Source: Mytilus californianus (lineage: Eukaryota). From it: a stretch of DNA of 64,000 nucleotides. Shown one piece after another: positions 18,301 to 47,740 of this stretch (position 1 is the stretch's first letter; each line of letters begins with the position of its first letter). Position numbers and translations under genes: made by a program. The stretch is taken from contig NW_026262581.1 of the NCBI RefSeq assembly GCF_021869535.1, forward strand, positions 35,402,001-35,466,000, written 5' to 3'. Below the pieces are notes generated by a model. That model was not told the origin of the DNA. It worked only from the letters and a program-made list of their open reading frames with translations, and ran no database searches.

Positions 18301-19494
18301 CATGTGAGGTGTGGCGTGGCTATGGTACAGTCTTGTTCAGATAGTCAAAGGTCTGAAAAGAAACAAAATCATAATCTTTTACAATGGAAATTTCCAATCC
18401 ATTATATATTTAAATTTATTCTACATTGAATGGTACTGGATAATATTATGATTCTTCGTGCAATTAAACCGTTTAAGACACTTTGATTTTTTTTTGTTAA
18501 ACCACAAGTGTTATTAATATTTTAAAAGTATTAGTCAAGTCCCTTAGCTTAACAGATAGCGAACCTTTTTTTCTAAAGTAATGAACTTAAAATTATAGTT
18601 TACATCTCTTCTATCTAAGCTAGTGAGGTAACATTTAAGGGCACAACTGACACATCAACATAAGGCTCGATTGCAAATAAGACAACTATCATATAAAGAC
18701 TAACATACAGCTATGTACACACATATCTTCTTCAACATTGAGCAAAACCCATACCATATACACTTGTAGTTAGTACAAAAGTGCCCAAGATAACAAAATG
18801 TAAAACAATTCACCAGAGAAAACCAACGACCATATTTAAGCTAATAACTTTAAATGTGAAATTACTACCGCAGACAGCAACCAACGACACCCACTGGATT
18901 AGGGGCTCCTTGCTTGTGACAAACATTAAGAATGTGGAAGGGATAAACATGTTTCTAAACACAAAATCAGATCGTTACTAATGAAGTATATATGTATATA
19001 CAAATAATTATATGTTTTTGGGAACTTAAGATATACTCTTTTATTACGCAAGTGTGAAAAATCATTTATATCTCAAAATTACCGGGAGAAAGATATCTAC
19101 AATCGATGGTCGTGATTTTGAAAATTTGTTAATAATTTTCCAAATTTGTTAGAAATTTGATTTGTTTTGATTGGATACTCTAGGTATACAAACTGATTTG
19201 ATTCGAACGTTACTATAATGTAGACCAATCGCGCTTCTAGCGTAATATATTATAAGCCAAGTTTATTTGATATAGTTTTTACAAGGGTGTCACCAGTTCT
19301 GTAGTCAGTACATCTGTGTTGACATGAAATGATACGATAATATTCTGTAAATTTTCTTCTCTTCAATTTTGATTTTTCGACAAACTTAAGTTTTTCGACC
19401 CTAGACATCGCATTAGTCTATTTGGCACAACTTTTCTAAATTTCTGGTTTTCAATGATCTTCAATTTTGTATTTGATTTTGTTGTTCCAACTGA

Positions 19495-21814: not shown

Positions 21815-22032
21815 CTATACATACTTTGTTTCGCAAGTAAAGAGAGAAAGCGAACCGCATGGGCTATCATTCCACAAAAAACCCAACTTAGCATGCACAT
21901 TTACACAATCTTCCATATTATCATTATTGTTTGGTTCTCCACCAGCCCAATTAGATAGAGTGATATTTCTATTATCACTCGTCCATACAAAAGTTCCTTC
22001 ATTATCTGTGTCTGTTCCACCGAGCCAAAAAG
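21815..22032 (-). CDS. C-type lectin, last exon (T-FWLGGTDTDNEGTFVW...NWAGGEPNNNDNMEDCVNV...LWNDSPCGSLSLFTCETKYV*)
   Basis: Canonical CTLD second half with WLGG, W, EPN, EDC, WND and C..C. Phase-1 acceptor (ttcattcaaag) at 22033. Stop TAG at 21815-21817 with AATAAA hexamers near 21742-21755. An alternative GTATGT donor at 21824 could lead to another terminal exon. Confidence 0.93.
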
Positions 22033-24658: not shown

Positions 24659-24752
24659 TGCCACTCCTAGATCTAGCTATGTCACTGATATAATCTATCT
24701 CTGATTGTGTTACAGGTTCTGAAAGTTTAGCGCCGAGGTACATACAGCTTGC
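24659..24752 (-). CDS. C-type lectin, middle exon (ASCMYLGAKLSEPVTQSEIDYISDIARSRSG)
   Basis: tgtttcag acceptor and GTAAGT donor. 94 nt, phase 0 in, phase 1 out. Matches the CTLD helix pattern C...GA.L.......E..YI. Confidence 0.9.
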
Positions 24753-26328: not shown

Positions 26329-26414
26329 CTTGGCAGTTTCCCAGTCCTCAGATGTTGTGCTGAAGAAATAGCAATTTGAACCCGGAAGATAAAGCCATCC
26401 ACTTTCACACGGAG
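26329..26414 (-). CDS. C-type lectin, first CTLD exon (x-PCESGWLYLPGSNCYFFSTTSEDWETAK); absent from the ORF track
   Basis: tattttacag acceptor and GTACGT donor. 86 nt, phase 1 in, phase 0 out. C..GW......CY.F......W..A is the long-form CTLD start. Confidence 0.92.
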
Positions 26415-27102: not shown

Positions 27103-28483
27103 CAGATAAACGAAAACACCTAATGAGCGTTATCGATTCTTATTAAGGCTTCATTCCCGTCTACTTTGTATGCAATGGGTTTTAACTTATTCAAGAATAG
27201 CAATTCAAGATTTCTTCAAAATATTATTTATTCTTTGCAGTGGATTTCTACTGAATATAGGCAACAATGTTAGATGTATGAAAAATCTCGAGAAAATCAC
27301 TTCCCGCCAAATTTTCAATGGCTTATATCTCGAAAACAAGCACACGGGTCCTTCAATTTTTTCTGCTTTTTAAGTTCCTTTATTCATATACTTTCAATTT
27401 ACAAGTCTTTTAAAAAGCTTGTTATTTTGAAACAGAGTAGCGAACATCCTTAAGCTAATTTGTTGGTCGTGAAAATGAAACTTGTTAAATATTAGCGTCA
27501 ATACAGAAGTGCTGACTACTGGGCTGGTGATACCCTCAGGAAAAAACCTCCACCAGCAGTGGTATCGACTCAGAGGTTGTGAATAAACTCATCATAGTTA
27601 CCAGGTTAATTTTGAGGTTGCCAGACGCGCCTTTCGTCTTCAAAAGACTTCTCAGTTATGCTCGAATGAAAAAAAGTTAAAAAGACCAATGAAAGTACGA
27701 AGTTGAAGAGCATTTAGGACATAAAATTGCGAAAGGTTTCAAATTCAAATTATAAAATTCCCCAATATTTGACGCTGAACGTTAAGCAATTCTTAATCAA
27801 TAACCCCAGCCAATTTCGTTGTTTTAAATTTTTCTACAGCTTCTAATGTACACTTTAACACCATGACAGGATTTCCTAAATGCTTGTATTTTTCAGCAGC
27901 ATAAAGGTATAAATGCATTTTAATACAAATATTGCTGACTTCTGTTTTTTTTGGGAGAGGAAGAGGACTTTCTTTGTACAGGGCATGTCTTAAATTTGTG
28001 ATATATTTAGATAACTTTAATAAATATATCATAAGGTTAATGATAAATGAGATAACACATCGAAAATATATTTTCGCTTTCCCCTGCTCTTAATTCTTTT
28101 TTTTTTGTTATTTATTTTCCAAATCCTTGCTCATGTCTGGAGTCTGCTCCTACAGTAGTTAAACATAAGAATTTTATCTACTTAGCAAAAGTTATGATTT
28201 ATCTAAAGAATAGAAAAACAAAGGATATGGGGTATCCATCCATGACAAAAAATCAGTGCATGCGCAGCAAATAACACACAAAAAGCAAAGGAACAGCGCT
28301 TTAATTGCCATTCTTCATCTCAAAGTCACAGTGAGGCCTTCAACACGGAGCAAAAAAACCCCTCACCTCACTGCAAGTTTAAGACGGCCCTAGCACCTGT
28401 TGGAGCGGAATACTTTGCAAACTGAAATAATTCGGGTAGACATTGAAAGATGTAACACAAATTTAAAGCTACAATCGTCCTAC

Positions 28484-28532
28484 CTTGTGTAATCATGATA
28501 ATAATCAGGAACGTAAACATTTTGTAACTCAT
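28484..28532 (-). CDS. Signal-peptide first exon, copy A1 (MSYKMFTFLIIIMITQ + G), intact
   Basis: ATG at 28532, hydrophobic core FTFLIIIMI, phase-1 donor AG|GTAGG, and TATAAATA 61 nt upstream. Confidence 0.72.
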
Positions 28533-28592
28533 GTCGACAGTCATATATGCGCAACGTGCATTCATCATTATCGTACACGATCTGTGGTTCCT

Positions 28593-28600
28593 TATTTATA
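28593..28600 (-). promoter_or_regulatory. TATA box (TATAAATA) of copy A1
   Basis: Consensus TATA at a plausible distance from the signal-peptide ATG. The same box is present at 31198-31205. Confidence 0.55.
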
Positions 28601-29334
28601 TCATAAGATGTTTTATGCAATTAAATTATTAAATTCATTTAATGTGTGCAACAGGAGAATGAAATTGTTAAAAAAAGTAAAATCACAAAAATACTGAACT
28701 CCGAATACTTAAACGATTCTTTAGATACAATTTTATTCCGTCTCATGACATAGTTAATGTTATATAAATCGCATTATTTTAAAATGTGTGTATACAAATT
28801 TGCAAAGCATGTTAACAAAAAAAACCATTGACTTCAAAAAATGAAAACAACTTGTTATAAATTTAATATGTCCGAAGTGCTTTTCTGGAGAAGTTTTTGC
28901 ATATTAATTATAAATAATTCGAAAAACAACGCATTACGATTAACGTCGACATGTAATATAAATTGTTAATTCAAAATTTCAAAGAACACATGTTTTCAAT
29001 AGAATGTTTGAAGAAAACAAAGGTTCAAACTTTCTCAGACAAAGTCGGCTTCAGATGAATAAAGTTATTTTCTTTAGGTTCCGTTTTGGTCATATAGCTT
29101 CTTCAGTTTATAGGCATTTATTACTTCCGGCTTTCCAATGTTTAGGTTTAATGATTTCTGATGAAGACAAATCTAGTAAAGCGCTCAAGGCGCACGAAAT
29201 ATATAAAGTGTTATTTCTTTCTACCTCTTTACCTTACAACAACATATAACCCATACTCCACACCAAAATTTCACTTTCCATATATGCTTTATTAGATTGT
29301 CTTAACATATATTTAAATATCATATCATAATTAC

Positions 29335-29448
29335 CGTAACAACACTTCTTATGATGACAGCACCCATGCCCATTGACCGATGTTTCTGTAGATAAACATT
29401 CCCTTTTACACGTTCCATTCAGAGCAGAACATCGTGTGCCATGCACGT
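29335..29448 (-). CDS. Beta-defensin-like Cys-rich module exon B1 (D-VHGTRCSALNGTCKRECLSTETSVNGHGCCHHKKCCY-x)
   Basis: ttccttag acceptor and G|GTAATT donor. 114 nt, symmetrical phase 1-1. Cys spacing C-x6-C-x3-C-x11-CC-x4-CC resembles the big-defensin C-terminal beta-defensin domain. Confidence 0.8.
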
Positions 29449-29867
29449 CTAAGGAATACATTCGAAAAAGGTAATTAAACTAGTTTGTTGGTCGTAATAA
29501 TGAAACTTATTGAATGTTAGCGCCTTGTATAACTTTTCTTTTTCTTAAATTGTCCGTTAAACTAGAGGGATTTTTTTACAGAATGTTGGATATTTGATTA
29601 TCTGTGGAATGTTTGAACAATTTTATTATTTATAAATTAGTATTCTTGTGTTCAATTAACAAGGACTCGCGGAATCCAAGTCCGATAAAATTTGTTCAAT
29701 TGACTGTTTTCCTCTGGATTGTTACCTCTTGCGGAAGCACGTTTAAAATCCGACACCATATATCAATTACGTTTAAAGTGTGATATATTCATATTTCATT
29801 CACATGATTTTGTTCTGAATATTCAGACATGCAATAAACTCATCATAGAAACCAGGATTAAAATTTT

Positions 29868-29916
29868 GTACGCCAGACGAGCGTTTTGTCTTTAAATGAC
29901 TCATCAGTGACGCTCA
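29868..29916 (-). ncRNA. Degenerate type I hammerhead core (G12A); duplicated at 36130-36177
   Basis: gcgtca-CTGATGA-gtcatttaaagac-AAAA-cgctcg-TC-tggcgt: everything is in place except GAAA>AAAA. Confidence 0.65.
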
Positions 29917-31088
29917 AATCAAAAAATTTAAAAATGCCAAATAAAGTATGAAGTTGAAGAGCAATAAAGACAAAATTCAGAAACGTTTTGCCAAATACAG
30001 CTACGGTAATTTATTCATAGGGTAGAAGATCCTTAGTATTTCGAAAAATTTAAAGTTTTATAAACAGTTAATTTATAATTATGACCATATCAATGATAAT
30101 TCATGTCAATACAGAAGTGCTGACTACTGGACTGGTGATACCCTCAGGAAGAAACCTCCACCAGCAGTGGCATCGACAAAAGTGGTTGTAAATAAACTCA
30201 TCATATAGATACTAGGATCAACGTTGAGTACGCCAGACGCGCCTTCAAAAGACTCATCAGTGATGCTCGAATGAAAAAAGTAAAGAAAGGCCAAAAAAAG
30301 TCCGAAGTTGAAGAGTAGTGAGGACTCAAAATTACGAAATGTTTCAAATTCAAATTTTAAATTCCGCAATATTTGACGCTGAACGTTAAGCAATTCTTAA
30401 TCAATTATCCCAGCCAATTTCGTTGTTTTAAAATTTTCTACAGCTTCTAATGTATACTTTAACACCATGACAGGATTTCCTAAATGCTTGTATTTTTCAG
30501 CAGCATATAGGTATAAATGCATTTCAATACAAATATTGCTGACTTCTGGTTTTTTGGGGAGAGGAAGAGGACTTTCTTTGTACTGGGCATGTCTTAAACT
30601 TGTGATATATCTAGATAACATTCATAAATATATCATAAGGTTAATGATTAATGAGACAACACATCGAAAATATATTTTCGCTTTCCCCTGCTCTTAATTC
30701 TTTTTTTTTTGTTATTTATTTTCCAAATCCTTGCTCATGTCTGGAGTCTGCTCCTACAGTAGTTAAACATAAGAATTTTATCTACTTAGCAAAAGTTATG
30801 ATTCATCTATAGAATAGAAAAACAAAGGATATGGGGTATCCATCCATGACAAAAAATCAGTACATGCTCAGCAAATAACACACAAATAGCAAAGGAACAG
30901 CGCTTTAATTGCCGTTCTTCATCTCAAAGTCACAGTGAGGCCTTCAACACGGAGCAAAAAAAAACCTCACCTCACTGCAATTTTAAGACGGTCCTAGCAC
31001 CTGTTGGAGTGGAATACTTTGCAAACTGAAATAATTCGGGTAGATATTGTAAGATGTAACACAAAAGCAAAAGCTACAATCGTCCTTC

Positions 31089-31137
31089 CTTGTGTAATCA
31101 TGATAATAATCAGGAACGTAAACATTTTGTAACTCAT
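31089..31137 (-). pseudogene. Signal-peptide first exon copy A2, splice donor mutated GT>GA
   Basis: Same 49-nt coding segment as A1. The donor reads AG|GAAGG (31088-31087). TATA is intact at 31198-31205. Confidence 0.7.
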
Positions 31138-32509
31138 GTCGACAGTCATATATGCGCAACTTGCATTCATCATTATCGTAAAAGATCTGTGGCTCCTTAT
31201 TTATATCATAAGATGTTTTATGCAGTTAAATTATTAAATTCCTTTAATGTGTGCAACAGGAGAATGAAATTGTTAAATGATTCTTTAGATACAATTTACT
31301 TCCGTCTAATAACACAGTTAATGTTATATTAATCGCATTATTAATGTTAGTATACAAATTTACAAAGCGTGTTAACAAAAAAAACCCATTGACTTCAAAA
31401 AATGAAAACAACACGTTATTAATTTAATGCGTCCGAAGCGCTTTTCTGGAGAAGTTTTTGCATATGAATTATAAATCATTCGAATAACAATGCATTACGA
31501 TAAAGCGTCGACATATAATAAAAATTGTTAATTTAAAATTTCAAAGAACACATGTTTTCAATATAATATTTGCAGTATTCATGACGTGTCGCAACAATAA
31601 CTTCACTTGAAACGCTTGAAATAATCAATAAGATATGCAACTGCATAAGACGTTTGTAAACATCAACAACAAAAGGACTAAAACAAAACAGTCAAATCTT
31701 CAATCTACTGGCATGATTTATCATTCTATGTGCATAGCAGTATAAAAAATGTTAAATCATACTTTTCAAATGAGATTTTTAGATAATCTCCTTTTAAGGT
31801 AAATTTCTGAAGAAACAGCTCGGCTAGAGTACGGTTAATTGTTTGTAATAACATAAAGGTTTACAGTACCAATTTTACTGACAAATACTCATTTCAAAAA
31901 TTAATGGTATTAGTGAGACTCGGGCCCAAACATATTTGAAAATCAAAATTCAAACGTTGATAGGCTTCATCTGCACATGTGTGTCTTACTCTGATACTCA
32001 GCTAGAAATCAGATATGGGAATAATTAGAAGTTCATGAAACGCTAACGAGGTAAACTAAATAACCTGTGGATCAAACTTGACAGATAGACCTTTGAAACG
32101 CTATAGATTGTTATCTGGACTGTTTAACATTCGTTCGTATAAATTTATTAAAAATTCCGCATACGAAGTATGGTATTATTGATGCTTATATGTTCAAAGC
32201 AACTGCTTTCGAAAGTTGAAAAAAATGAAAATGATACTTTAAAGATTGTGTGCGTCCTCTGCGATTTCTGATCAACCCACATCAAGAACGTTAAAACCCA
32301 AACAAATGAATAATGTTTAAACACAAGTTGCTTTTTAAAAAAAAAGTCAATACGTGAACCTAAGAACTTTTTTATGCTAATTATTATTTCAACTGAATTG
32401 TAAATGGTATCTCAGTATTTTCATTACCATGTGTGTGTGGAGGATAATATTTTCTTTTTATTGTAAATCAGGACAATTATGGCATGTTGAGAGTGATGTT
32501 AAATATAAA

Positions 32510-32630
32510 GAAGGGAGATAAGGAATGTTTTTATTTCAATAGTTCATTCCTGGATGGTGTTAGCTTTCATTTTTACCAGTTTGACTACTACCAATGGATG
32601 ACACTTCTAGGGTGTTTATTGGTAGAGGTA
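32510..32630 (+). pseudogene. Highly decayed Penelope-like RT fragment inside the W block (also about 34385-34505 and 39890-40015)
   Basis: ggagataaggaatgttttta...ttcctggatggtg...tctagggtgtttatt resembles YDKRDDF...FPFLDG...SYGVYI. Resemblance is by eye only. Confidence 0.35.
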
Positions 32631-32966
32631 ATATTTCACCTAGAATCCTTCAGTAAATTTATATATTTTTCTTTTTAAAATACATATTATGGAGCAATAA
32701 CGATATTTTGTTTCATAAAATGTGGAAGTTTTATTCCTACCAAATAAGACAAAATCTACTTGCTTCCCATTTTATTTTGTGCCGTAAAATCTTCTTCATC
32801 TCAAAGTCACAGTGAGGCCTTCAACACGGAGCAAAAAAAAAACCTCACCTCACTGCAAGTTTAAGACGGCCCTAGCACCTGTTGGAGCGGAATACTTTGC
32901 AAACTGAAATAATTCGGGTAGATATTGTAAGATGTAACACAAAAGCAAAAGCTACAATCGTCCTAC

Positions 32967-33015
32967 CTTGTGTAATCATGATAATAATCAGGAACGTAAA
33001 CATTTTGTAACTCAT
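32967..33015 (-). CDS. Signal-peptide first exon copy A3, donor intact, TATA mutated (TATGAATA at 33076-33083)
   Basis: ATG at 33015 and AG|GTAGG donor at 32966. It is the nearest upstream intact donor for exon B1. Confidence 0.6.
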
Positions 33016-34843
33016 GTCGACAGTCATATATGCGCAACTTGCATTCATCATTATCGTAAAAGATCTGTGGCTCCTTATTCATATCATAAGATGTTTTATG
33101 CAGTTAAATTATTAAATTCCTTTAATGTGTGTAACAGGAGAATGAAATTGTTAAATGATTCTTTTGATACAATTTACTTCCGTCTAATAACACAGTTAAT
33201 GTTATATAAATCGCATTATTAATGTTTGTATACAAATTTACAAAGCGTGTTAACAAAAAAAAACCCATTGACTTCAAAAAATGAAAACAACACGTTATTA
33301 ATTTAATGCGTCCGAAGCGCTTTTCTGGAGAAGTTTTTGCATATGAATTATAAATCATTCGAATAACAATGCATTACGATAAAGCGTCGACATATAATAA
33401 AAATTGTTAATTTAAAATTTCAAAGAACACATGTTTTCAATATAATATTTGCAGTATTCATGACGTGTCGCAACAATAACTTCACTTGAAACTCTTGAAA
33501 TAATCAATAAGATATGCAACTGCATAAGACGTTTGTAAACATCAACAACAAAAGGACTAAAACAAAACAGTCAAATCTTCAATCTACTGGCATGATTTAT
33601 CATTCTATGTGCATAGCAGTATAAAAAATGTTAAATCATACTTTTCAAATGAGATTTTTAGATAATCTCCTTTTAAGGTAAATTTCTGAAGAAACAGCTC
33701 GGCTAGAGTACGGTTAATTGTTTGTAATAACATAAAGGTTTACAGTACCAATTTTACTGACAAATACTCATTTCAAAAATTAATGGTATTAGTGAGACTC
33801 GGGCCCAAACATATTTGAAAATCAAAATTCAAACGTTGATAGGCTTCATCTGCACATGTGTGTCTTACTCTGATACTCAGCTAGAAATCAGATATGGGAA
33901 TAATTAGAAGTTCATGAAACGCTAACGAGGTAAACTAAATAACCTGTGGATCAAACTTGACAGATAGACCTTTGAAACGCTATAGATCGTTATCTGGACT
34001 GTTTAACATTCGTTCGTATAAATTTATTAAAAATTCCGCATACGAAGTATGGTATTATTGATGCTTATATGTTCAAAGCAACTGCTTTCGAAAGTTAAAA
34101 AAAATGAAAATGATACCTTAAAGATTGTGTGCGTCCTCTGCGATTTCTGATCAACCCACATCAAGAACGTTAAAACCCAAACAAATGAATAATGTTTAAA
34201 CACAAGTTGCTTTTTAAAAAAAAAGTCAATACGTGAACCTAAGAACTGTTTTATGCTAATTATTATTTCAACTGAATTGTAAATGGTATCTCAGTATTTT
34301 CATTACCATGTGTGTGGAGGATAATATTTTCTTTTTATTGTAAATCAGGACAATTATGGCATGTTGAGAGTGATGTTAAATATAAAGAAGGGAGATAAGG
34401 AATATTTTTATTTCAATAGTTCATTCCTGGATGGTGTTAGCTTTCATTTTTACCAGTTTGACTACTACCAATGGATGACACTTCTAGGGTGTTTATTGGT
34501 AGAGGTAATATTTCAACTAGAATCCTTCAGTAATTTTATATATTTTTCTTTTTAAAATACATATTATAGAGCAATAACGATATTTTGTTTCATAAAATGT
34601 GGAAGTTTTATTCCTACCAAATAAGACAAAATCTACTTGCTTCCCATTTTATTTTGTGCCGTAAAATCTTCTTCATCTCAAAGTCACAGTGAGGCCTTCA
34701 ACACGGAGCAAAAAAAAAACCTCACCTCACTGCAAGTTTAAGACGGCCCTAGCACCTGTTGGAGCGGAATACTTTGCAAACTGAAATAATTCGGGTAGAT
34801 ATTGTAAGATGTAACACAAAAGCAAAAGCTACAATCGTCCTAC

Positions 34844-34880
34844 CTTGTGTAATCATGATAATAATCAGGAACGTAAACAT
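34844..34880 (-). pseudogene. Signal-peptide exon copy A4 with an 84-bp deletion removing TATA and MSYK
   Basis: aaacat is joined directly to aagatg via CAT microhomology. Relative to A1, 28521-28604 is missing. The second ATG (MFTFLIIIMITQ) and the GT donor remain. Confidence 0.7.
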
Positions 34881-35610
34881 AAGATGTTTGATGCAATTAA
34901 ATTATTAAATTAATTTAATGTGTGCAACAGGGGAATGAAATTGGTAAAAGAAGTAAAATCACAAAAATACTGAACTCCGAATACTTAAACGATTCTTTAG
35001 ATACAATTTTATTCCATCTCATGACATAGTTAATGTTATATAAATTGCATTATTTTAAAATGTGTGTATACAAATTTGCAAAGCATGTTAACAAAAAAAA
35101 CCATTGACTTCAAAAAATGAAAACAACTTGTTATAAATTTAATTCGTTCGAAGTGCTTTTCTGGAGAAGTTTTTGCATATTAATTATAAATAATTCGAAA
35201 AACAACGCATTACGATTAACGTCGACATGTAATATAAATTGTTATTTCAAAATTTCAAAGAACACATGTTTTCAATAGAATGTTTGAAGAAAACAAAGGT
35301 TCAAACTTTCTCAGACAAATTCGGCTTCAGATGAATAAAGTTATTTTCTTTAGGTTCCGTTTTGGTCATATAGCTTCTTCAGTTTATAGGCATTTATTAC
35401 TTCCGGCTTTCCAATGTTTAGGTTTAATGATTTCTGATGAAGACAAATCTAGTAAAGCGCTCAAGGCGCACGAAATATATAAAGTGTTATTTCTCTCTAC
35501 CTCTTTACCTTACAACAACATATAACCCATACTCCACACCAAAATTTCACTTTCCATATATGCTTTATTAGATTGTCTTAACATATATTTAAATATCATA
35601 TCATAATTAC

Positions 35611-35724
35611 CGTAACAACACTTCTTATGATGACAGCACCCATGCCCATTGACCGATGTTTCTGTAGATAAACATTCCCTTTTACACGTTCCTTTCAGAG
35701 CAGAACATTGTGTGCCATGCATGT
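35611..35724 (-). CDS. Beta-defensin-like module exon B2 (D-MHGTQCSALKGTCKRECLSTETSVNGHGCCHHKKCCY-x); no upstream first exon found
   Basis: Same splice sites and 114-nt length as B1, with 3 substitutions. Confidence 0.7.
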
Positions 35725-36219
35725 CTAAGGAATACATTCGAAAAAGGTAATTAAACTAGTTTGTTGGTCGTAATAATGAAACTTATTGAATGTTAGCGCC
35801 TTGTATAACTTTTCTTTTCTCTTAAATTGTCCGTTAAACTAGAGGGATTTTTTTACAGAATGTTGGATATTTGATTATCTGTGGAATGTTTGAACAATTG
35901 AATTATTTATAAATTAGTATTCCTGTGTTCAATTAACAAGGACTCGCGGAATCCAAGTCCGATAAAATTTGTTCAATTGACTGTTTTCCTCTGGATTGTT
36001 ACCTCTTGCGGAAGCACGTTTAAAATCCGACACCATATATCAATTACGTTTAAAGTGTGATATATTCATATTTCATTCACATGATTTTGTTCTGAATATT
36101 CAGACATGCAATAACCAGGATTAAAATTTTGTACGCAAGACGAGCGTTTTGTCTTTAAATGACTCATCAGTGACGCTCAAATCAAAAAATTTAAAAATGC
36201 CAAATAAAGCACGAAGTTG

Positions 36220-39200
36220 AAATTTGAAAACTTTCTTCTTATATGATTTGGCACCTTTTTTTTAAATTTATTTATTTCCTTATTTGTAATATGAATAACA
36301 GTGTGTTTAAGCAGTATCCACTAATCTTCTTTCTTTTGGTACCTCGTCTGTCTGTATCTCAGCAGATGAGAAAAACACAGCATTTCTAACATACAATGTA
36401 GCATTTTCAACCATCAAACTGTTGTGTTACTTTAACGCATTCGTATTATGTGGCCAAAATGCTTCCTTTATTCTTTTTGTCATTAAATGTTGCACCATTG
36501 TATGTCCTGTGTGTCTCTGATATTTGTGATAAAGATGGCAGCGGTTATGGTTACTGGAGCAGATCAGTAATGGTAATTGGGATTTTGTTATAGGTAGACC
36601 GTAAAACAACAAAGCTGTGTTCTTTAATGTAGCACAACAGTTTAAGGAAAGGAACTGTTTATGTTAAAAATGGTGTAGCTTTGTTAAGTTAAAGAAAATT
36701 TAATGTTAGTCACCACTGTCTTCTTTTTTTTCGGTTTCCATTCGTCAGATTTTCATTTTATAGGAATTTTAGTTCCTTTGTTGAATATATCTGCGAAGAT
36801 CCGTATATTGTATAATTCTCTTGTATGTAAGTAATTTTGCGGTTCATTTAACGATATCCATTCTTTTCATTTGATTTTTGCCTGCAGGTATTTCATACAA
36901 CTACAAATAGATTACTTTATGTAGTTGTATTTCTAAGGAATGTAACAGAAAATTTATTAGTTTTAATTTATAATTTATAAAGTTTATTAAAAGTTCATTA
37001 ACCTTTGCTTATGATACTAAATAAGAATAGCATTGATGTCTCAAGATGTCAGTGGTTGTCTTAAGTTGTATTTTAATATTTTGTCCCTTTGGGAATTTTG
37101 GTGTGAATTACAAATGTTTGATGGCCTCTGTTTCATTTTAATATCTCAAAAATATGTGTTCAAGAACTCTAACTTGACTTAGTGTTTCTCTCCATCGTTC
37201 ATAGGCCAGTAAAAAATGGAAATACATAACAGTGTTTGGTTCTATTAATAAGGTATAGTACATAAAATTTACTTTTATTAAACTTTGGACATACAATTGA
37301 ATACAAATAGCAATAATGTTGCAAGTACGTGCCATAATATTTAAAGAAACAAAAATATATTTTGAATATTAAGTATATTCGGATGTATTTCAGAGGATTT
37401 ATACTTAATTACTTACGAATAATTCAGAAAACTATTATTGAATATTGGACTATCAAAATTTTTGTTCTAAATTGAATTTGTTTTTTCAATTTTCAAACAA
37501 AAGCAGAAATATATTTTCTTTTTTAGCACTTTGAACTATCATAAGTCGTTCCTACAGTGTACGTTTCATTTCCGGTATATTGAATAATATATAAATTGAA
37601 AAATGCACCAGCAAGTATTATTATTTATATTAGGAAAATCAAGAATATCCCGAATCTTGAGTACAATATCTGGTGTAATAGAAAGAGCTGCTTTCACTGC
37701 ATTTTTTTAACTTTTTTTTTATTTAAGCGTCACTGCTGAGTCTTTTATAGACGAAACGCGCGTCTGTCGTACACAGTATTTATGTTGATTTTATTCACTG
37801 TATGAGGGTTTCCACGTTTGAATCCTCTCATTAACAATCAGAAATAAAAATTGCTTCAACTGAGAAATAAAATAAAAGAACGATCTAAAAGTGTAAAATA
37901 TGAGTACCAATTGTTCTTTATTTAATCCACACATTGATCATCTACAAAGAAATGTGCAGATTGTATTAGCAGATAATGTTCTTCTACAAGACATTTTGGA
38001 CTTAAATAACCCTGAACAACACTGTTTCATTTCGTTTTTTACCATTTTAAAACCAAAAACTGAAAAACCGATAAAATTTTAATAACAGATGCTAGCAATT
38101 TAACTGAAAAAGCATTAGGGAGACTCACACATGTGCAAAGAACATTCTTTTTACGAGAACTGTTCATGTTAAGCCGTATTATTGAACTTATGCCCTCCTT
38201 TTTAAGGGTCAGTTGAATCCTGCCATTTTTTTATGAAGCATTTGCAGAGATTCTACTGCATTTTGGGATTCAACATATCTACAAATAACGTAATACTAGA
38301 TTACTTCCCAGTGGTTTGATTAAGTAATTACTTAATCCCTTACCCTATCCCCTTTGGCTTGGTCAAGTGTATCATATTCCACTTTTTTCGAATGAAGTTG
38401 ATGATATATCTTGTTTAGGGTAAATGCAAAAAGCGTTTAGGCCTCATAATACTTATAGCGTTATTTTAAGTTATGACACTCGGATGAAGTCGCTGCTGTT
38501 TGGTTTTTGTCCCCGAGGTTGTTATGCATTACATCAATTTTCGTTGATAATATTAAAATTTAAAACAAAATAATAAAGAATCTAATGTTACCAATCCCTC
38601 AGGCAAGATAGAACAAATATGGTTCTGGCTATTTAATTAGGTCTTTATTGTCGCTCAGCTCTGCAGTGTTTATACATTACTTGTTTCTTTTTTCTTCTTC
38701 AGTTTTTGTTTCCAGTATACCCGATGAGGTTATTCCAGAAAAGCTCTTTAGAAGCCAAAAAAGTTATTATGTCAATTTATTTGAAAGACTCTGTACATTT
38801 ACTTTCAACTTTTCTAAGTTATTGTTGAAGTTAAATCTTGTTCTAATGCATATACTTTTGTCTACTGACTTCATATTAACGTGACTTTTGTAAAACAAAA
38901 TTGGTATTTTTTGTAGTTTGTTTGCTGTTTGATTAAAGAATATTTCTTGTGTCATAACAGCATATTTAGAAATGAAAAACATAACAAAAATTCATATAGA
39001 CAATTGTAAAATGAATTACTTTTTCATATATGGAGACATAGACACGAACACATTACAAGTTGCAATTTCTTTTATCGGGAAATATGTAAGAAGGATGATT
39101 ATTGAATAATTTTGTTTCAAAATTGAATTCAAGGAACCTTAGTCTTCTTTTCAATTATATAGAACACTTTTCAATATTTCTTTTCGGAATTTTTTTTCAA

Positions 39201-39358
39201 TAAAATTCTTCGACTGCGGTTTAAATAACCCTGCAAGAACGTTAATTTTCATAGATTTATTGATGTCTTAATATATTAATCTGATCACTTCAAAATTATA
39301 GATAAATACTGTATACCAACAAAACGTTTACATCACTGTGCAAAACGCATACATGGAT
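36220..39358 (+). repeat. Long inverted repeat, left arm (about 3.14 kb)
   Basis: Reverse complement of 40450-43591. The ORF track shows mirrored pairs (36427-/43199+, 37138-/42474+, 37900+/41726-, 38648+/40924-, 38767-/40826+). Confidence 0.95.
37727..37770 (+). ncRNA. Near-intact type I hammerhead core (A6C); mirrored at 42038-42081 (-)
   Basis: gcgtca-CTGCTGA-gtcttttatagac-GAAA-cgcgcg-TC-tgtcgt. Stem II, the palindromic stem III and the GUC triplet are intact. Confidence 0.7.
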
Positions 39359-40449
39359 GTGTGTCTTACTCTGATACTCAGCTAGAAATCAGATATGGGA
39401 ATAATTAGAAATTCATGAAACGCTAACGAGGTAAACTAAATAACGTGTGGATCAAACTTGACAGATAGACCTTTGAAACGCTATAGATCGTTATCTGGAC
39501 AGTTTAACATTCGTTCGTATAAATTTATTAAAAATTCTGCATACCAAGTATGCTATTATTGATGCTTATATGTTCAAAGCAACTGCTTTTGAAAGTTGAA
39601 AAAAGATGAAAATGATACTCTAAAAATTGTGTGCGTCCTCTGCGATTTCTGATCAACCCACATCAAGAACGTTAAAACCCAAACAAATGAATAATGTTTA
39701 AACACAAATTGCTTTTTAAAAAAAAAGTCAATACGTGAACCTAAGAACTTTTTTATGCTAATTATAATTTCAACTGAATTGTAAATGATATCTCAGTATT
39801 TTCATTACCATGTGTGTGGAGGATAATATTTTCTTTTTATTGTAAATCAGGACAATTATGGCATGTTGAGAGTGGTGTTAAATATAAAGAAGGGAGAAAA
39901 GGAATGTTTTTATTTCAATAGTTTATTCCTGGATGGTGTTAGCTTTCATTTTTACCAGTGTGAAAGGTCAAACTACTACCAATGGATGACACTTCTAGGG
40001 TGTTTATTGGTAGAGGGAATATTTCACCTAGAATCCTTCAGTAATTTTATATATTTTTCTTTTTAAAATACATATTTCAGAGCAATAACGATATTTTGTT
40101 TCATAAAATGTGGAAATTTTATTCCTACCAAAAAAGACAAAATCTACTTGCTTCCCATTTTATTTTGTGCCGTAAAAAACCATTTGGGTAAACTGTGGTG
40201 TTCAAACATTTCACAAAAATATAATCACAATCTCCGGTTCATACAAATATATCTGCATGCAGTCTATTAACCACAGTCACGTTGATTAATTTGTGAATTG
40301 TTATTATTAGATTCATTTAAGGCTACATTTTAAGCTTGACTGCTAAAATCAATAGTTACATTTATTTAATATTGCATGTTTAATATATTAGTTTGAAAGA
40401 TCATATCATAAAGGGAAAAAAGTATTGTTGTATTATAAGCATCGTGTGT
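39359..40449. repeat. Spacer of the inverted repeat; 39359-40175 is a third, truncated copy of block W
   Basis: gtgtgtcttactctgatactcagctag...ttttgtgccgtaaaa matches 31980-32790 and 33857-34668 in the same orientation. Confidence 0.9.
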
Positions 40450-43400
40450 ATCCATGTATGCGTTGTGCACAGTGATGTAAACGTTTTGTTGGTATACAGT
40501 ATTTATCTATAATTTTGAAGTGATCAGATTAATATATTAAGACATCTATAAATCTATGAAAATTAACGTTCTTCCAGGGTTATTTAAACCGCAGTCGAAG
40601 AATTTTATTGAAAAAAAATTCCGAAAAGAAATATTGAAAAGTGTTCTATATAATTGAAAAGGAGACTAAGCTTCCTTGAATTCAATTTTGAAACAAAATT
40701 ATTCAATAATCATCCTTCTTACATATTTCCCGATAAAAGAAATTGCGACTTGTAATGTGTTCGTGTCTTTGTCTCCATATATGAAAAAGTAATTCATTTT
40801 ACAATTGTCTATATGAATTTTTGTTATGTTTTTCATTTCTAAATATGCTGTTATGACACAAGAAATATTCTTTAATCAAACAGCAAACAAACTACAAAAA
40901 ATACCAATTTTGTTTTACAAAAGTCACGTTAATATGAAGTCAGTAGACAAAAGTATATGCATTAGAACAAGATTTAACTTCAACAATAACTTAGAAAAGT
41001 TGAAAGAAAATGTACAGAGTCTTTCAAATAAATTGACATAATAACTTTTTTGGCTTCTAAAGAGCTTTTCTGGAATAACCTCATCGGGTATACTAGAAAC
41101 AAAAACTGAAGAAGAAAAAAGAAACAAGTAATGTATAAACACTGCAGAGCTAAGCGACAATAAAGACCTAATTAAATAGCCAGAACCATATTTGTTCTAT
41201 TTTGCCTGAGGGATTGGTAACATTAGATTCTTTATTATTTTGTTTTAAATTTTAATATTATCAACGAAAATTGATGTAATGCATAACAACCTCGGGGACA
41301 AAAACCAAACAGCAGCGACTTCATCCGAGTGTCATAACTTAAAATAACGCTATAAGTATTATGAGGCCTAAACGCTTTTTGCATTTACCCTAAACAAGAT
41401 ATGTCATCAACTTCATTCGAAAAAAGTGGAATATGATACACTTGACCAAGCCAAAGGGGATAGGGTAAGGGATTAAGTAATTACTTAATCAAACCACTGG
41501 GAAGTAATCTAGTATTACGTTATTTGCAGATATGTTGAATCCCAAAATGCAGTAGAATCTCTGCAAATGCTTCATAAAAAAATGGCAGGATTCAACTGAC
41601 CCTTAAAAAGGAGGGCATAAGATCAATAATACGGCTTAACATGAACAGTTCTCGTAAAAATAATGTTCTTTGCACATGTGTGAGTCTCCCTAATGCTTTT
41701 TCAGTTAAATTGCTAGCATCTGTTATTAAAATTTTATCGGTTTTTCAGTTTTTGGTTTTAAAATGGTAATAAACGAAATGAAACAGTGTTGTTCAGGGTT
41801 ATTTAAGTCCAAAATGTCTTGTAGAAGAACATTATCTGCTAATACAATCTGCACATTTCTTTGTAGATGATCAATGTGTGGATTAAATAAAGAACAATTG
41901 GTACTCATATTTTACACTTTTAGATCGTTCTTTTATTTTATTTCTCAGTTGAAGCAATTTTTATTTCTGATTGTTAATGAGAGGATTCAAACGTGGAAAC
42001 CCTCATACAGTGAATAAAATCAACATAAATACTGTGTACGACAGACGCGCGTTTCGTCTATAGAAGACTCAGCAGTGACGCTTGAATAAAAAAAAAGTTA
42101 AAAAAAAATGCAGTGAAAGCAGCTCTTTCTATTACACCAGATATTGTACTCAAGATTCGGGATATTCTTGATTTTTCTAATATAAATAATAATACTTGCT
42201 GGTGCATTTTTCAATTTATATATTATTCAATATACCGGAAATGAAACGTACACTGTAGGAACGACTTATGATAGTTCAAAGTGCTAAAAAAGAAAATATA
42301 TTTCTGCTTTTGTTTGAAAATTGAAAAAAAAATTCAATTTAGAACAAAAATTTTGATAGTCCAATATTCAATAATAGTTTTCTGAATTATTCGTAAGTAA
42401 TTAAGTATAAATCCTCTGAAATACATCCGAATATACTTAATATTCAAAATATATTTTTGTTTCTTTAAATATTATGGCACGTACTTGCAACATTATTGCT
42501 ATTTGTATTCAATTGTATGTCCAAAGTTTAATAAAAGTAAATTTTATGTACTATACCTTATTAATAGAACCAAACACTGTTATGTATTTCCATTTTTTAC
42601 TGGCCTATGAACGATGGAGAGAAACACTAACAGTCAAGTTAGAGTTCTTGAACACATATTTTTGAGATATTAAAATGAAACAGAGGCCATCAAACATTTG
42701 TAATTCACACCAAAATTCCCAAAGGGACAAAATATTAAAATACAACTTAAGACAACCACTGACATCTTGAGACATCAATGCTATTCTTATTTAGTATCAT
42801 AAGCAAAGGTTAATGAACTTTTAATAAACTTTATAAATTATAAATTAAAACTAATAAATTTTCTGTTACATTCCTTACTAATACAACTACATAAAGTAAT
42901 CTATTTGTAGTTGTATGAAATACCTGCAGGCAAAAATCAAATGAAAAGAATGGATATCGCTAAATGAACCGCAAAATTACTTATATACAAGAGAATTATA
43001 CAATATACGGATCTTCGCAGATATATTCAACAAAGGAACTAAAATTCCTATAAAATGAAAATCTGACGAATGGAAACCGAAAAAAAAGAAGACAGTGGTG
43101 ACTAACATTAAATTTTCTTTAACTTAACAAAGCTACACCATTTTTAACATAAACAGTTCCTTTCCTTAAACTGTTGTGCTACATTAAAGAACACAGCTTT
43201 GTTGTTTTACGGTCTACCTATAACAAAATCCCAATTACCATTACTGATCTGCTCCAGTAACCATTACCGTTGCCATCTTTTTCACAAATATCAGAGACAC
43301 ACAGGACATACAATGGTGCAACATTTAATGACAAAAAGAATAAAGGAAGCATTTTGGCCACATAATACGAATGCGTTAAAGTAACACAACAGTTTGATGG

Positions 43401-43591
43401 TTGAAAATGCTACATTGTATGTTAGAAATGCTGTGTTTTTCTCATCTGCTGAGATACAGACAGACGAGGTACCAAAAGAAAGAAGATTAGTGGATACTGC
43501 TTAAACACACTGTTATTCATATTACAAATAAGGAAATAAATAAATTTAAAAAAAAGGTGCCAAATCATATAAGAAGAAAGTTTTCAAATTT
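40450..43591 (-). repeat. Long inverted repeat, right arm
   Basis: Reverse complement of 36220-39358 with scattered substitutions and small indels. Confidence 0.95.
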
Positions 43592-44799
43592 TTCATAACT
43601 CTTTGTTCGTCATTTTTGTAGTCAGCACTTTCAATTTGCAGCAATCACATAATTTTACTTTGCATAAATAAGCACAATATGAAAGGTCCAAATATGTGCC
43701 TCAGATTTCTAATATCATGTCTATTATAAATAATGACCCGTTCTATTTTCGTCCCAATTACCTTATAAAGAACAAATATTCAAAATCGATTTATTTCCTA
43801 AACTAGGCCTTTTATAAAAAAAAATCTGAGATAAGAATTTTGTAGCAGTGCTCATATGCATGCTCTCTATGATGAAATGAACATTAGCTTAGTCTCAATT
43901 AAGCCGACTACGCTAATATAAAAATGAGAATGGTGAATATGTTCCATTTCCTTCCCCTAAATGCTTATTTAGAAATATGTAGGTAATGATGGAATTACAA
44001 TTTAGATACAAACAACCCAATTTTCCTGAATTTGACTGTTGTAATACCTTAAGCCAAACTAGCTTCAAGATATACACAGTAACAATTTAAAAATACATCA
44101 ACAAAAATCACGAAACAAATGCAAGTTTGTTTTTTAGAGACTTTTGACCTGCTAGTAAGTATTTCGTTCGTGTAAATCATAATCAATAAAAAAAACTTTT
44201 TCTGCATTGTATCTAATTAAGTGACGTCTTTTGTTTGTGACGTACTTGGTTTTGTGATAGTGTAACAAAAGCCGTCTAGTACATGTATTACACTAATATG
44301 GGATATCTTATCAGAATGTACATAATACATTATTATCACACTGATACATGTATACAGCTAGGTAACACGATAAATTTATCTGTTATCAGCTTGAATAAAA
44401 TGTAAAAGTTTTATCATTGCAAGTCTTTAAAAATCGGTGACGTAATAGAAAAGGGTGTTTAATCTTTTATAAAGGGTAGGCTTTATGTTTTATGCTATAA
44501 TTACTTTAATTTTTTTTTTTCTTGTGTCATTTTGGTAATATACGAAATTTATTAGGTATAATTTTCATGTACTTTTCAATTCAGCTGCTTTGAATAAATT
44601 AAACCAGGGAGAATAGAAACATTTTTGTTTATATTTGTAAACTATCGTTTGTCTTTTTCGGATGGCGCAGTTACTTCTATGGTAAATCAACCATTGTAAC
44701 AATAGAATTAAATGGCAGCCAAACAGTGTCAATTTTACATTTTACGTACGTCGCATTAAACTAATACACCGAACAATGAAATGATTTTCTCCTGCTTTC

Positions 44800-45020
44800 A
44801 AAGAGAGGTGAAAGATACCAAAGGGACATTCAAACTCATAACTGAGTCGAAAATAAACTGACAACACCATGGCTGAAAAAGAAAACGACAAACAGACAAA
44901 CAATAGTACAAAAACACAACATAGAAAACTAAAGACTGAGCAACACGAACCCGACCAAAAACTTGTGGTGATCTCAGGTGCTCCGGAAGGGTAAGCAGAT
45001 CCTGCTCCATATGTGGTACC
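44800..45020 (-). mobile_element. Penelope-like 3' UTR fragment
   Basis: Matches the reverse complement of 15145-15356. Confidence 0.8.
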
Positions 45021-45767: not shown

Positions 45768-47740
45768 AACAAGAGGCTCTCAAGAGCCTGAATCGCTCAC
45801 CTGTAATTTTTTGCTTAAATCTTTCATCAATGATTATTTTTGCTTTTCAATATATATTAATGAGTGGCTTAAAAATACCATTTAAATGTTCTTTGTATCT
45901 GTCATATTTTCTTCAAAAGCAAAAAAATACATTTTACCCCTATGTTCCATTTTAGTCATAGTGGCTATGTTTTTGGATGTACAAGGAAATAAAATACAAA
46001 ATTTATACTAGAAACTCTGAAACTCATTCAGCCCAAGTTTGGCTGAAATTGATTCAGCAGTTTCAAAGGAGAAGATGTTTTAAAGTAAGCAAACTAGATG
46101 GAACAAATTGTGAAAAATTGTCTTTAACGGACAATAACTCCTTAAGGGGTCAATTGACAATTTTGGTCATATTGAACTTATTTCTAGATCTTACTTTGCT
46201 GAACATTTTTGCTGTTTACAGTTTATCTTTATCTATAATAATATTCAAGATAATAACCGAAAACTGCCAAATTTCCTTAAAATCATCAATTCAGGGTTAA
46301 TAACCTAAAAAACAGATACCCGATTTGGCTGATAATTTCAGGGCAGGTAGACCTTGACCTAATGAATACTTTATCTTCATGTCTGATTTGCTCTAAATGC
46401 TTTAGTTTTTGAGATATAAGCCAAAAACTGCATTTTACCCTATGTTCTATTTTTAGCCATGGCGGCCATGTTTTCTTAGGAAACAAAAAATAAAACACAA
46501 ACTTTATTCTAGATAACCTAAGAATAATTCAGCTTAAGTTTAGTTTAATTTTGTTCAGTAGTTTCAGAGGAGAAAATTTTTAAAAGTTAGAAAACATGAT
46601 AAACAAATAGTGTAAAATTGTCCTTAAAAGGCAATAACTTCTTATGGGGTCAATTGACAATTTTGGTCATCCAACTTATTTGTTGATCTTACTTTGCTGA
46701 ACATTTTTGCTGTTTACAGTTTATCTTTATCTATAATAATATTCAAGATAATAACCAAAAACTGCAAAATTTCCTTAAAATTACCAATTTAGTGGCAGCA
46801 ACCCAACAATGGGTTGTAAGAATCATCTGAAAATTTCAAGGCTGATGGAACTTGACCTAATGAACATTTTAACCCCATGTCTGATTTGCTCTAAATGCTC
46901 TAGTTTTTGTACAAGCCAAAAACTGCATTTTACCCCTATGTTCTATTTTTAGCATTGGCGGCCATGTTTTTTGACAAAACAAAAAAATAAAACATAAAGT
47001 TTATTTTCTATACCCTAAGGATCATTCAGCTAAGGTTTAGTTGGAATTGGTTCAGTAGTTTAAGAGAAGAAGATTTTTTAAAGTTAGAAAACATGATACA
47101 CAAATTGTGTAAAATTGTCCTTAAAGGGCAATATCTCCTCAAAGGGTCAATTGGCAATTTTGGTCATCCAACTAATTTGTAGATCTTACTTTGTTGAACA
47201 TTTTTGCTGTTTACAGTTTATCTTTATCTATAATAATATTCAAGATAATAACCAAAAACTGCAAAATTTCCTTAAAATTACCAATTTAGTGGCAGCAACC
47301 CAACAATGGGTTGTTAGATTCATCTGAAAAATTCAAGGCTGATAGAACTTGACCTAATGAACATTTATACTCCATTTCAGATTTGCTCGAAATGCTTTAG
47401 TTTTTGAGATATAAGCTCAAAACTGCATTTTACCCCTATGTTCTAATTTTAGCCATGGCGGTCATGTTTTTGACGAAACAGAAAATAAAACACAAACTAT
47501 ATTTTAGATACCCTAAGGATCATTCAGCTTAAGTTTGGTTGGAATTGGTTCAGTAGTTTCAGAGGAGAAGATGTTTGAAATAGTTTACACCGGACGAACG
47601 ACGACAGACTCCGTCGTCGTCTGTCGTCGTCCGTCGTCGTCCGTCCGGTGTAAACTATTTCAAACATCTTCTCCTCTGAAACTACTGAACCAATTCCACG
47701 ACGGACGCCAAGTGAGGGCAAAAGATCACATTTCCTTCGG
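45768..47740 (+). mobile_element. Helentron/pearl-like non-autonomous element with an internal about 500-bp tandem core (about 3.3 units)
   Basis: 5' aacaagaggctctcaagagcc hairpin. The core anchor cattttaccc(c)tatgttc recurs at about 45930, 46431, 46927 and 47427. It ends with a GAC microsatellite then ggacgccaagtga. Confidence 0.75.

What the first reader, a model, noticed from the sequence alone, without database searches (positions are those of the whole stretch)
28484..34880. Four copies of the promoter/first exon, each in a different functional state
Seen: A1 (28.5k) has TATA, ATG and GT donor all intact but lies downstream of exon B1. A2 (31.1k), the natural upstream partner of B1, has an intact TATA but donor GT>GA. 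A3 (33.0k) has an intact donor but TATAAATA>TATGAATA. A4 (34.8k) has lost TATA and MSYK through an 84-bp microhomology deletion. Inference: promoter choice would decide the product, with A1 giving the lectin alone and A3 giving the defensin-lectin fusion. The locus may be caught mid-way through gaining or losing the defensin module, or may be a two-isoform switch created by duplication.
Basis: partly seen in the sequence, partly recalled or inferred. Interest (0 to 1): 0.7.

Follow-up and report, generated by a model that had tools for sequence, protein, structure and literature searches.

The report
Duplicated first exons of mussel lectin gene
A California-mussel immune gene that joins a defensin-like module to a sugar-binding lectin has had its promoter and first exon copied four times, leaving one old intact copy that could make the lectin alone and three young copies in different states of damage, but nothing yet shows which copies are used.

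Summary
Four copies of a TATA promoter plus signal-peptide exon (A1-A4) lie on the minus strand with exactly the lesions described. A2 has donor GT>GA, A3 has TATAAATA>TATGAATA, and A4 lacks 84 bp. The gene is the RefSeq 'perlucin-like protein' XP_052082186.1 of Mytilus californianus. Its annotated product is the fusion: signal exon A, 7-Cys beta-defensin-like exon B1, then a C-type lectin. M. coruscus has the same gene with one A and one B, with TATA, ATG and GT all intact. So the fusion is ancestral, the extra copies are lineage-specific, and the A2 and A3 lesions are derived. A is the native partner of B: paralogues on another chromosome are signal exon + B + a Cys-rich third exon (Pfam somatomedin-B in two loci), with no lectin. 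A1 is old (about 7% diverged). It came from a tandem A-B duplication whose second B exon was later deleted, and a 48-bp relic of that intron remains. It is fully intact and in frame with the lectin. A2, A3 and A4 are young (0-1.4%), and A4 is a chimeric breakpoint rather than a simple deletion. 'Losing the defensin' fits better than 'gaining' it. No lectin-only product is annotated or present in public protein sets, so the switch is unproven. The scan had already noted the fusion, the exon and the inverted duplication in this window.

The parts
28484..28600 (-). A1: intact TATAAATA (28593-28600), RefSeq-type ATG at 28542-28544, MSYK ATG at 28530-28532, signal-peptide exon ending at 28484 in phase 1, donor GT at 28482-28483. 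It lies between B1 and lectin exon C1.
   Evidence: It is about 6.7-7.2% diverged from A2/A3. There are no A1-specific changes in the 63 essential nucleotides.
31087..31205 (-). A2: intact TATAAATA (31198-31205) and ATG (31135-31137), but donor GT>GA (31087-31088). It is the positional orthologue of the single M. coruscus exon A, 1.6 kb upstream of B1.
   Evidence: (T>A at 31087 is private to A2, and M. coruscus and the paralogues have GT)
32965..33083 (-). A3: TATGAATA (33076-33083, derived G at 33080), intact ATG (33013-33015) and donor GT (32965-32966). It is the only copy upstream of B1 with a canonical donor.
   Evidence: It is 1.4% from A2.
34842..34880 (-). A4: truncated copy keeping Met5, the hydrophobic core and donor GT. 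TATA and MSYK are absent. It is a chimeric junction at 34880/34881 between an A1-type upstream flank and an A3-type downstream part.
29335..29448 (-). B1: 114-nt phase 1-1 exon encoding a 7-Cys beta-defensin-like module. It is the copy used in XP_052082186.1.
   Evidence: (Pfam Defensin_beta_2 E=0.0047, below threshold)
35611..35724 (-). B2: young duplicate of B1 with 3 non-synonymous and 0 synonymous differences. No first exon lies upstream of it, so it is an orphan.
26329..26414 (-). C1: first C-type lectin exon, with a phase-1 acceptor that accepts either A or B.
24659..24752 (-). C2: second lectin exon.
21825..22032 (-). C3: lectin exon with EPN and WND motifs. The RefSeq model splices at donor GT 21823-21824. 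Read-through would instead end at TAG 21815-21817.
18337..18352 (-). C4: terminal micro-exon coding part (completes the Lys codon begun in C3, then encodes PLTI and the stop) used in the RefSeq and M. coruscus proteins.
28209..28458 (-). Dispersed repeat of about 250 bp, starting 26 bp after exon A. It is present in every A copy and in M. coruscus. The breakpoint of the 1877-bp tandem unit lies inside it.
   Evidence: (1898 candidate places)
27450..27497 (-). Relic of the intron just upstream of a now-deleted second B exon in the A1 unit. It matches 29475-29522 at 41 of 48 positions.
30915..34880 (-). 1877-bp tandem unit (upstream flank, promoter, exon A, part of the repeat) present 2.1 times. 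It generated A2, A3 and the 3' part of A4.
   Evidence: (98.9% over 2091 bp)
34878..36221 (-). Young copy (97.3%) of 28602-29958, the block holding B and the A1-type upstream flank. It ends 2 bp before the position of the TATA box.

Best explanation
The locus is the 5' end of the Mytilus californianus 'perlucin-like' gene.

**Ancestral form.** As in M. coruscus, the gene had one TATA promoter plus signal-peptide exon (A), one beta-defensin-like exon (B) and a C-type lectin (C1-C4).

**History in the M. californianus lineage.**
1. A tandem duplication of the A-B module occurred about as long ago as the species split.
2. A deletion then removed the downstream B exon. This left A1, a complete promoter and first exon, inside the B1-to-C1 intron.
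3. Much later, tandem and complex microhomology-joined duplications produced A3, A4 and B2.

**Predicted outcome from sequence.**
- A3 (weakened TATA, good donor) splices to B1 and gives the annotated fusion.
- A2 (good TATA, dead donor) gives only unproductive transcripts.
- A4 has no promoter.
- A1 would splice directly to C1 and give a secreted lectin without the defensin module.

The duplication history and the competence of each copy are shown. Which copies actually initiate transcription is inferred. I put A1 activity at about 40-45%.
For: - The public protein XP_052082186.1 (P0004) is identical to window exons A, B1, C1, C2, C3 and C4.
- The M. coruscus orthologous locus L036 has a single A with TATAAATA, ATG and GT intact, and a single B. 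It is collinear with A2-intron-B1.
- Three paralogous loci on contig C2 have an A-like exon with TATA 0.9-2 kb upstream of a B exon and no lectin. Somatomedin-B exons lie downstream of B at the C2 70.0 Mb locus and at the degenerate C88 copy.
- Divergences: A1 vs A2/A3 6.7-7.2%, orthologous divergence 4.9-5.8%, A2 vs A3 1.4%, A3 vs A4 0 of 212.
- A 48-bp relic of the pre-B intron lies downstream of A1.
- GA in A2 and G in the A3 TATA are private derived changes at positions conserved in the orthologue and in the intact paralogues.
- The A1 lineage has 5.0% substitutions in its flanks but 0 in the 63 essential nucleotides (P=0.04), and 2 of 123 in the core (Fisher P=0.06).
- The phases of A, B and C1 are compatible.
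Against: - No transcript data could be examined.
- RefSeq's protein cluster holds only the fusion. Two word searches found no lectin-only or partial protein.
- A1 carries only about 410 bp of the ancestral upstream flank. The more distal flank shared with the paralogues was not co-duplicated.
- The constraint signal on A1 is marginal.
- The M. coruscus assembly is ONT-based and could have missed copies, although a 7%-diverged A1 would not collapse and no trace of it was found.
- The young copies may be specific to one haplotype.
Confidence: 0.7

Rival explanations
1. Selected two-isoform switch. A1 and A3 are both active promoters, and the animal regulates the ratio of lectin-only to defensin-lectin product.
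For: - A1 has kept TATA, ATG, open frame and donor over about 5% lineage-specific divergence.
- The frames are compatible.
- The fusion is annotated.
Against: - No lectin-only isoform is in RefSeq's cluster or the public protein sets.
- A3, the only canonical route to the fusion, has a damaged TATA. That looks like decay rather than regulation.
- The statistics for A1 constraint are marginal (P about 0.04-0.06).
Confidence: 0.2
2. Single-product gene with inert debris. Only the fusion is made, and A1, A2 and A4 are silent duplication relics inside introns and the upstream flank.
For: - Only the fusion model exists publicly.
- Mussel immune loci are known hot spots of structural and presence/absence variation (PMC10138031).
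- The young copies already carry lesions.
Against: - A1 is the oldest copy yet the only one with no lesion.
- It retains a TATA box that is lost in the pseudogenised paralogue on C2 at 49.96 Mb.
- An intact TATA plus ATG plus donor in frame with C1 would be expected to fire at least weakly.
Confidence: 0.4
3. Assembly artefact. The near-identical copies (A2/A3/A4, B2, inverted arms) are haplotypes or chimeric reads stitched in tandem.
For: - The young copies differ by 0-3%, which is in the range of allelic divergence in mussels.
- A 99% inverted duplication lies next to them.
Against: - The window has no gaps. The assembly is HiFi/hifiasm with purge_dups (PMC9710001), and the repeat units are at most 3.1 kb, shorter than HiFi reads.
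- A1 is 7% diverged, has distinct junctions, and cannot be an allele of A2.
- No second copy of the locus exists elsewhere in the assembly.
Confidence: 0.07

Closest known systems
Tandemly duplicated alternative first exons with their own promoters (for example the UGT1A and clustered protocadherin loci; from general knowledge)
   Same: Several promoter-plus-first-exon units lie upstream of shared downstream exons, and each has its own donor that would splice to a common acceptor.
   Different: Here the first exons encode the same signal peptide. The products would differ only because one unit lies downstream of a domain exon (B1). Two units are damaged, and use of more than one is unproven.
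Internal alternative promoters that give N-terminally shortened isoforms (general knowledge)
   Same: A1 sits in an intron and would skip an upstream domain exon.
   Different: The internal promoter is a duplicate of the gene's own promoter and signal exon, so the short product would still be secreted. Its origin is traceable: duplication of A-B followed by deletion of B.
Big defensin / beta-defensin C-terminal domain exon preceded by a conserved phase-1 intron (PMC7203481)
   Same: Exon B begins after a phase-1 intron directly before the Cys-rich region. It has a C-x6-C-x3-C-x11/12-C-x4-CC spacing and a full-length sub-threshold match to Pfam Defensin_beta_2.
   Different: It has seven cysteines. 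It ends in phase 1 with a donor, so it is an internal module. It is joined to a C-type lectin here and, in the paralogues, to a Cys-rich third exon (Pfam somatomedin-B in two loci). Pfam is below threshold and the AlphaFold model is unusable.
Perlucin-like C-type lectins of bivalves
   Same: Lectin_C domain (E=5e-19) with EPN and WND motifs. RefSeq names the gene 'perlucin-like'.
   Different: It has an extra N-terminal Cys-rich module. Its nearest lectin paralogue in the genome is only 45% identical in the last large exon.
Presence/absence and structural variation of mussel immune genes (PMC10138031 and the works it cites)
   Same: Lineage-specific, young, complex duplications at a secreted immune gene.
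   Different: Here the variation affects promoter and first-exon modules within one gene rather than whole genes. Population data are lacking.

Membership tests
C-type lectin (Pfam PF00059) | Lectin_C domain above the curated threshold | tested here: met
   P0004 scores E=5.1e-19, 69.4 bits against a cut-off of 22.6. Exon C3 alone scores E=1.6e-11.
C-type lectin (Pfam PF00059) | Ca-dependent sugar-binding motifs (EPN/QPD and WND) | tested here: met
   EPN and WND are read directly in exon C3.
Beta-defensin / big-defensin C-terminal domain | Profile match above threshold | tested here: inconclusive
   PF13841 Defensin_beta_2 gives E=0.0047, 17.8 bits against a cut-off of 22.2, covering profile positions 1-30 of 30. 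There is no hit when the full-length protein is scanned.
Beta-defensin / big-defensin C-terminal domain | Phase-1 intron immediately 5' of the Cys-rich region | tested here: met
   The acceptor is at 29449-29450 and the exon starts with two bases that complete a codon. The feature is described in PMC7203481.
Beta-defensin / big-defensin C-terminal domain | Three-stranded beta-sheet fold with three defined disulfides | tested here: inconclusive
   The AlphaFold2 model has pLDDT 48.9, so no fold search was run. There are seven rather than six cysteines.
Alternative promoter / first-exon gene | Two or more first exons, each with a core promoter and a functional donor, upstream of shared exons | tested here: inconclusive
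   By sequence, A1 has all the signals, A3 has a donor but a mutated TATA, A2 has a TATA but no donor, and A4 has no promoter. Only A1 is fully equipped.
Alternative promoter / first-exon gene | Transcripts observed from more than one first exon | not testable with these tools
   No RNA data are available. Only the fusion protein is public.
Lineage-specific segmental duplication | Copies absent from the orthologous locus of a related species, with graded divergence | tested here: met
   M. coruscus L036 has one A and one B and no relic of A1. K2P distances range from 0 to 7%.

The most novel reading that the evidence does not exclude
The locus is a gene caught in 'de-fusion'. An old duplicate of the gene's own promoter and signal exon (A1) has been kept by selection and lets the mussel secrete the lectin without its defensin-like module. 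Meanwhile the upstream copies that feed the fusion are being disabled one motif at a time (TATA in A3, donor in A2). The state of these copies may differ between individuals.
Probability: 0.2. Interest if true: 0.65.

Novelty: new member of a known kind. Interest (0 to 1): 0.42.

Why it matters
If A1 is active, this locus would be a dated, step-by-step natural example of how a multi-domain secreted immune protein sheds a domain. The steps would be duplication of the promoter and signal exon, deletion of one domain exon, then decay of the upstream promoters. It would also show that the structural variation known for whole immune genes in mussels acts on promoter modules inside a gene. The locus offers a direct test, because one 5'UTR SNP (window 28556, C in A1, A in A2/A3) and the splice partner identify the promoter used. 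If A1 is silent, the locus is ordinary duplication debris around an annotated gene.

Tried and rejected
- **Other first exon.** I looked for another first exon between A1 and C1. The only signal-peptide-like ORF (28195-28314) lies inside the dispersed 250-bp repeat and is broken in the A2 copy, so I rejected it.
- **Paralogue exon 3.** DNA conservation alone did not reveal the third exon of the paralogues. It was found only through the public protein P0002.
- **Structure of exon B.** AlphaFold2 on the five-sequence alignment gave pLDDT 48.9. I made no fold search because the model is meaningless.
- **Locus of the RefSeq protein.** An exact look-up of P0004 returned nothing, because the window's own genome is left out. 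I therefore could not read which A copy the RefSeq model uses.
- **Public isoforms.** Word searches with P0004 and with P0004:40-130 found no other orthologue, no lectin-only isoform and no transcript-derived fragment. This is absence of evidence only.
- **Breakpoint and repeat end.** The idea that the 1877-bp tandem unit ends at the terminus of the dispersed repeat was wrong. The breakpoint lies about 148 bp inside the repeat.
- **Relic of A1 in M. coruscus.** A sensitive search of the 4-kb M. coruscus-specific segment found none.
- **Enrichment of A2/A3 lesions.** The result depends on a definition chosen after seeing the lesions (joint P about 0.004 for 10 sites, 0.11 for 63 sites), so I do not lean on it.
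- **Spliced models.** Exons were searched one by one by reference, and the full-length comparison used the public proteins P0001 and P0004. The joined lectin-only model (A1 to C1) was not built or searched.
Full report
**1. Observation**

The region is AT-rich animal DNA (32% G+C) and the gene lies on the minus strand. A self-comparison of the window shows nested repeats:
- 27497-28672 matches 30105-31277 at 92.8%.
- 28602-29958 matches 34878-36221 at 97.3%.
- 30915-33003 matches 32792-34880 at 98.9%, a tandem unit of 1877 bp.
- A 3.1-kb inverted duplication lies at 36220-39358 and 40450-43591.

- A1 has TATAAATA (28593-28600), an ATG, a 16-codon signal-peptide frame ending in phase 1 at 28484, and donor GT.
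- A2 is the same but has donor GA (31087-31088).
- A3 has TATGAATA (variant base 33080) and a good donor.
- A4 lacks 84 bp that include the TATA box and the first four codons.

Exon A with its promoter occurs nowhere else in the genome at the DNA level.

**2. The gene**

Downstream of A1 lie three C-type lectin exons with canonical splice sites and compatible phases: C1 at 26329-26414, C2 at 24659-24752 and C3 at 21825-22032. Pfam Lectin_C matches, and EPN and WND motifs are visible.

Upstream of A1 lies exon B1 (29335-29448). It is 114 nt, phase 1-1, and has seven cysteines. It gives a full-length but sub-threshold match to Pfam Defensin_beta_2 (E=0.0047). A phase-1 intron directly before the Cys-rich region is the conserved hallmark of big defensins and beta-defensins (PMC7203481). 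An AlphaFold model of the module was too poor to use.

**3. Public annotation**

I searched a profile of the B exons against 1.84 billion representative proteins and got three hits.
- The best is a Mytilus coruscus protein (P0001, CAC5419524.1).
- Its cluster-mate is XP_052082186.1, 'perlucin-like protein [Mytilus californianus]' (P0004).

P0004 is identical to the window's exons A, B1 (not B2), C1, C2 and C3, plus a terminal micro-exon C4 (18337-18352).

The genome size (1.65 Gb in 175 sequences) agrees with the 1.65-Gb HiFi and Omni-C assembly described in PMC9710001. So the window is M. californianus and RefSeq annotates the fusion.

The model must start at a copy upstream of B1. A3 is the only such copy with a GT donor, but I could not read the model's coordinates.

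The protein cluster contains no lectin-only isoform. Word searches with the whole protein and with residues 40-130 found none.

Exons were searched by reference, and the public proteins served as the full-length comparison. The lectin-only joined model was left out.

**4. Comparative anatomy**

The M. coruscus locus (L036) is collinear with the window but has one A and one B.
- The single A is at 9989-10036, with TATAAATA, ATG and GT intact.
- The single B is at 11240-11350, followed by C1 to C4.
- A2, its intron and B1 are the positional counterparts of that single unit.

Hence the fusion is ancestral to both species and the extra copies are specific to the M. californianus lineage. GA in A2 and the G in A3's TATA are derived private changes.

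**5. A belongs with B, not with the lectin**

B-like exons occur at four other places in the genome.
- The three on contig C2 each have an A-like signal exon 0.9-2 kb upstream, with a TATA box at the same distance and a GT donor.
- The pseudogenised copy at 49.96 Mb has lost both the TATA box and the open frame.
- None has lectin exons within 10 kb.
- Their B exons also end in phase 1 with a conserved donor.
- The third exon is a Cys-rich domain. It passes the Pfam somatomedin-B threshold at the C2 70.0 Mb locus and at the degenerate C88 copy.
- A M. galloprovincialis protein (P0002) shows the spliced form.

So A plus B is a portable 5' module. In this gene it is joined to a lectin.

**6. History of the copies**

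Divergences (K2P):

| Comparison | Divergence |
|---|---|
| A1 vs A2/A3 | 6.7-7.2% |
| A1 vs M. coruscus | 7.3% |
| A2/A3 vs M. coruscus | 5.3-5.8% |
| Orthologous C3 region | 4.9% |
| A2 vs A3 | 1.4% |
| B1 vs B2 | 1.2% |
| A3 vs A4, 3' part | 0 of 212 sites |

Parsimony counts over promoter plus intron give 61 changes on the A1 lineage. The A2 lineage has about 36 and M. coruscus has 41. A1 is therefore at least as old as the species split, or it evolves about 1.7 times faster.

Directly downstream of the A1 unit, 27450-27497 is homologous (41 of 48 positions) to 29475-29522. That stretch ends about 26 bp before the B1 acceptor, after which homology stops and resumes at the sequence that precedes C1 in M. 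coruscus.

The simplest reading is a tandem duplication of the A-B module followed by a deletion that removed the downstream B exon. That deletion is what makes A1 a lectin-only first exon.

A4's upstream flank is A1-type and its downstream part is A3-type. It is therefore a breakpoint junction with 3-bp microhomology, not a deletion within one copy.

**7. Predicted function**

Predicted outcome for each copy, from sequence alone:

| Copy | State | Predicted outcome |
|---|---|---|
| A1 | All signals intact | Splices to C1 in frame; secreted lectin of ordinary perlucin-like architecture |
| A3 | Mutated TATA, good donor | Splices to B1, then C1; the annotated fusion |
| A2 | Good TATA, dead donor | Extends into the intron, meets a stop, and any cryptic donor is out of frame; unproductive |
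| A4 | No core promoter | Not expected to initiate |
| B2 | No first exon upstream | Orphan |

On the A1 lineage the flanks carry 5.0% substitutions. The 63 essential nucleotides carry none (P=0.04), and the 123-bp core carries two (Fisher P=0.06). This is a marginal sign of constraint.

B1 and the lectin both evolve fast between the two species (pN/pS about 0.7 and 0.6). All cysteines are kept, so B1 does not look abandoned.

**8. Verdict**

It still lacks any expression evidence, and public annotation shows only the fusion.

The gene is annotated and the type of event is known, so I rate this as a new member of a known kind with moderate interest. The test is simple and is listed under next steps.

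Noticed in passing
L028/L029 (C2:59.17 Mb), L030/L031 (C2:70.03 Mb), L032/L033 (C2:49.96 Mb), L034/L035 (C88:9.00 Mb): There is a small paralogous family built as signal exon + B-like 7-Cys exon + a Cys-rich third exon. The third exon passes the Pfam Somatomedin_B threshold at the C2 70.03 Mb locus and at the C88 copy. The C2 49.96 Mb copy has a stop in the signal exon and a degraded TATA box. The C88 copy has a stop and no donor. P0002 and P0005 from M. galloprovincialis show the spliced form.
   Followed up: partly
window 28209-28458 (also 30813-31062, 32792-32940 and 34669-34817 in part): A dispersed repeat of about 250 bp, with an internal stem-loop, sits 26 bp after exon A. The genome search gave 1898 candidate places at 83-90% identity. 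It is also present at the same spot in M. coruscus.
   Followed up: partly
window 36220-39358 and 40450-43591: A 3.1-kb inverted duplication at 99% identity. The right arm is collinear with M. coruscus, so the left arm is the inserted copy. It abuts the B2 block on one side and a truncated copy of the upstream flank (39357-40177) on the other.
   Followed up: partly
window 21815-21826 and 18337-18352: The lectin has two possible ends. Read-through of C3 gives YV-stop. The RefSeq and M. coruscus models instead splice from 21825 to a micro-exon that completes a Lys codon and encodes PLTI-stop, 3.5 kb downstream.
   Followed up: partly
L036 11674-15741: A 4-kb stretch between B and C1 in M. coruscus has no counterpart in the window. 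It is either deleted in M. californianus together with the second B exon, or inserted in M. coruscus. It contains pieces similar to repeats elsewhere in the window.
   Followed up: partly
window 45917-47585: A tandem array with a period of about 500 bp, with copies 79-85% alike.
   Followed up: no
window 14339-15356 and 49798-50815: A 1-kb inverted pair at 98.9% identity, part of a repeat family with further copies at 9310-9756 and 44797-45020.
   Followed up: no
L036 1-3871: The neighbour of the M. coruscus gene on the upstream side is a sialate O-acetylesterase-like gene (Pfam SASA, SIAE_C), according to the precomputed annotation.
   Followed up: no
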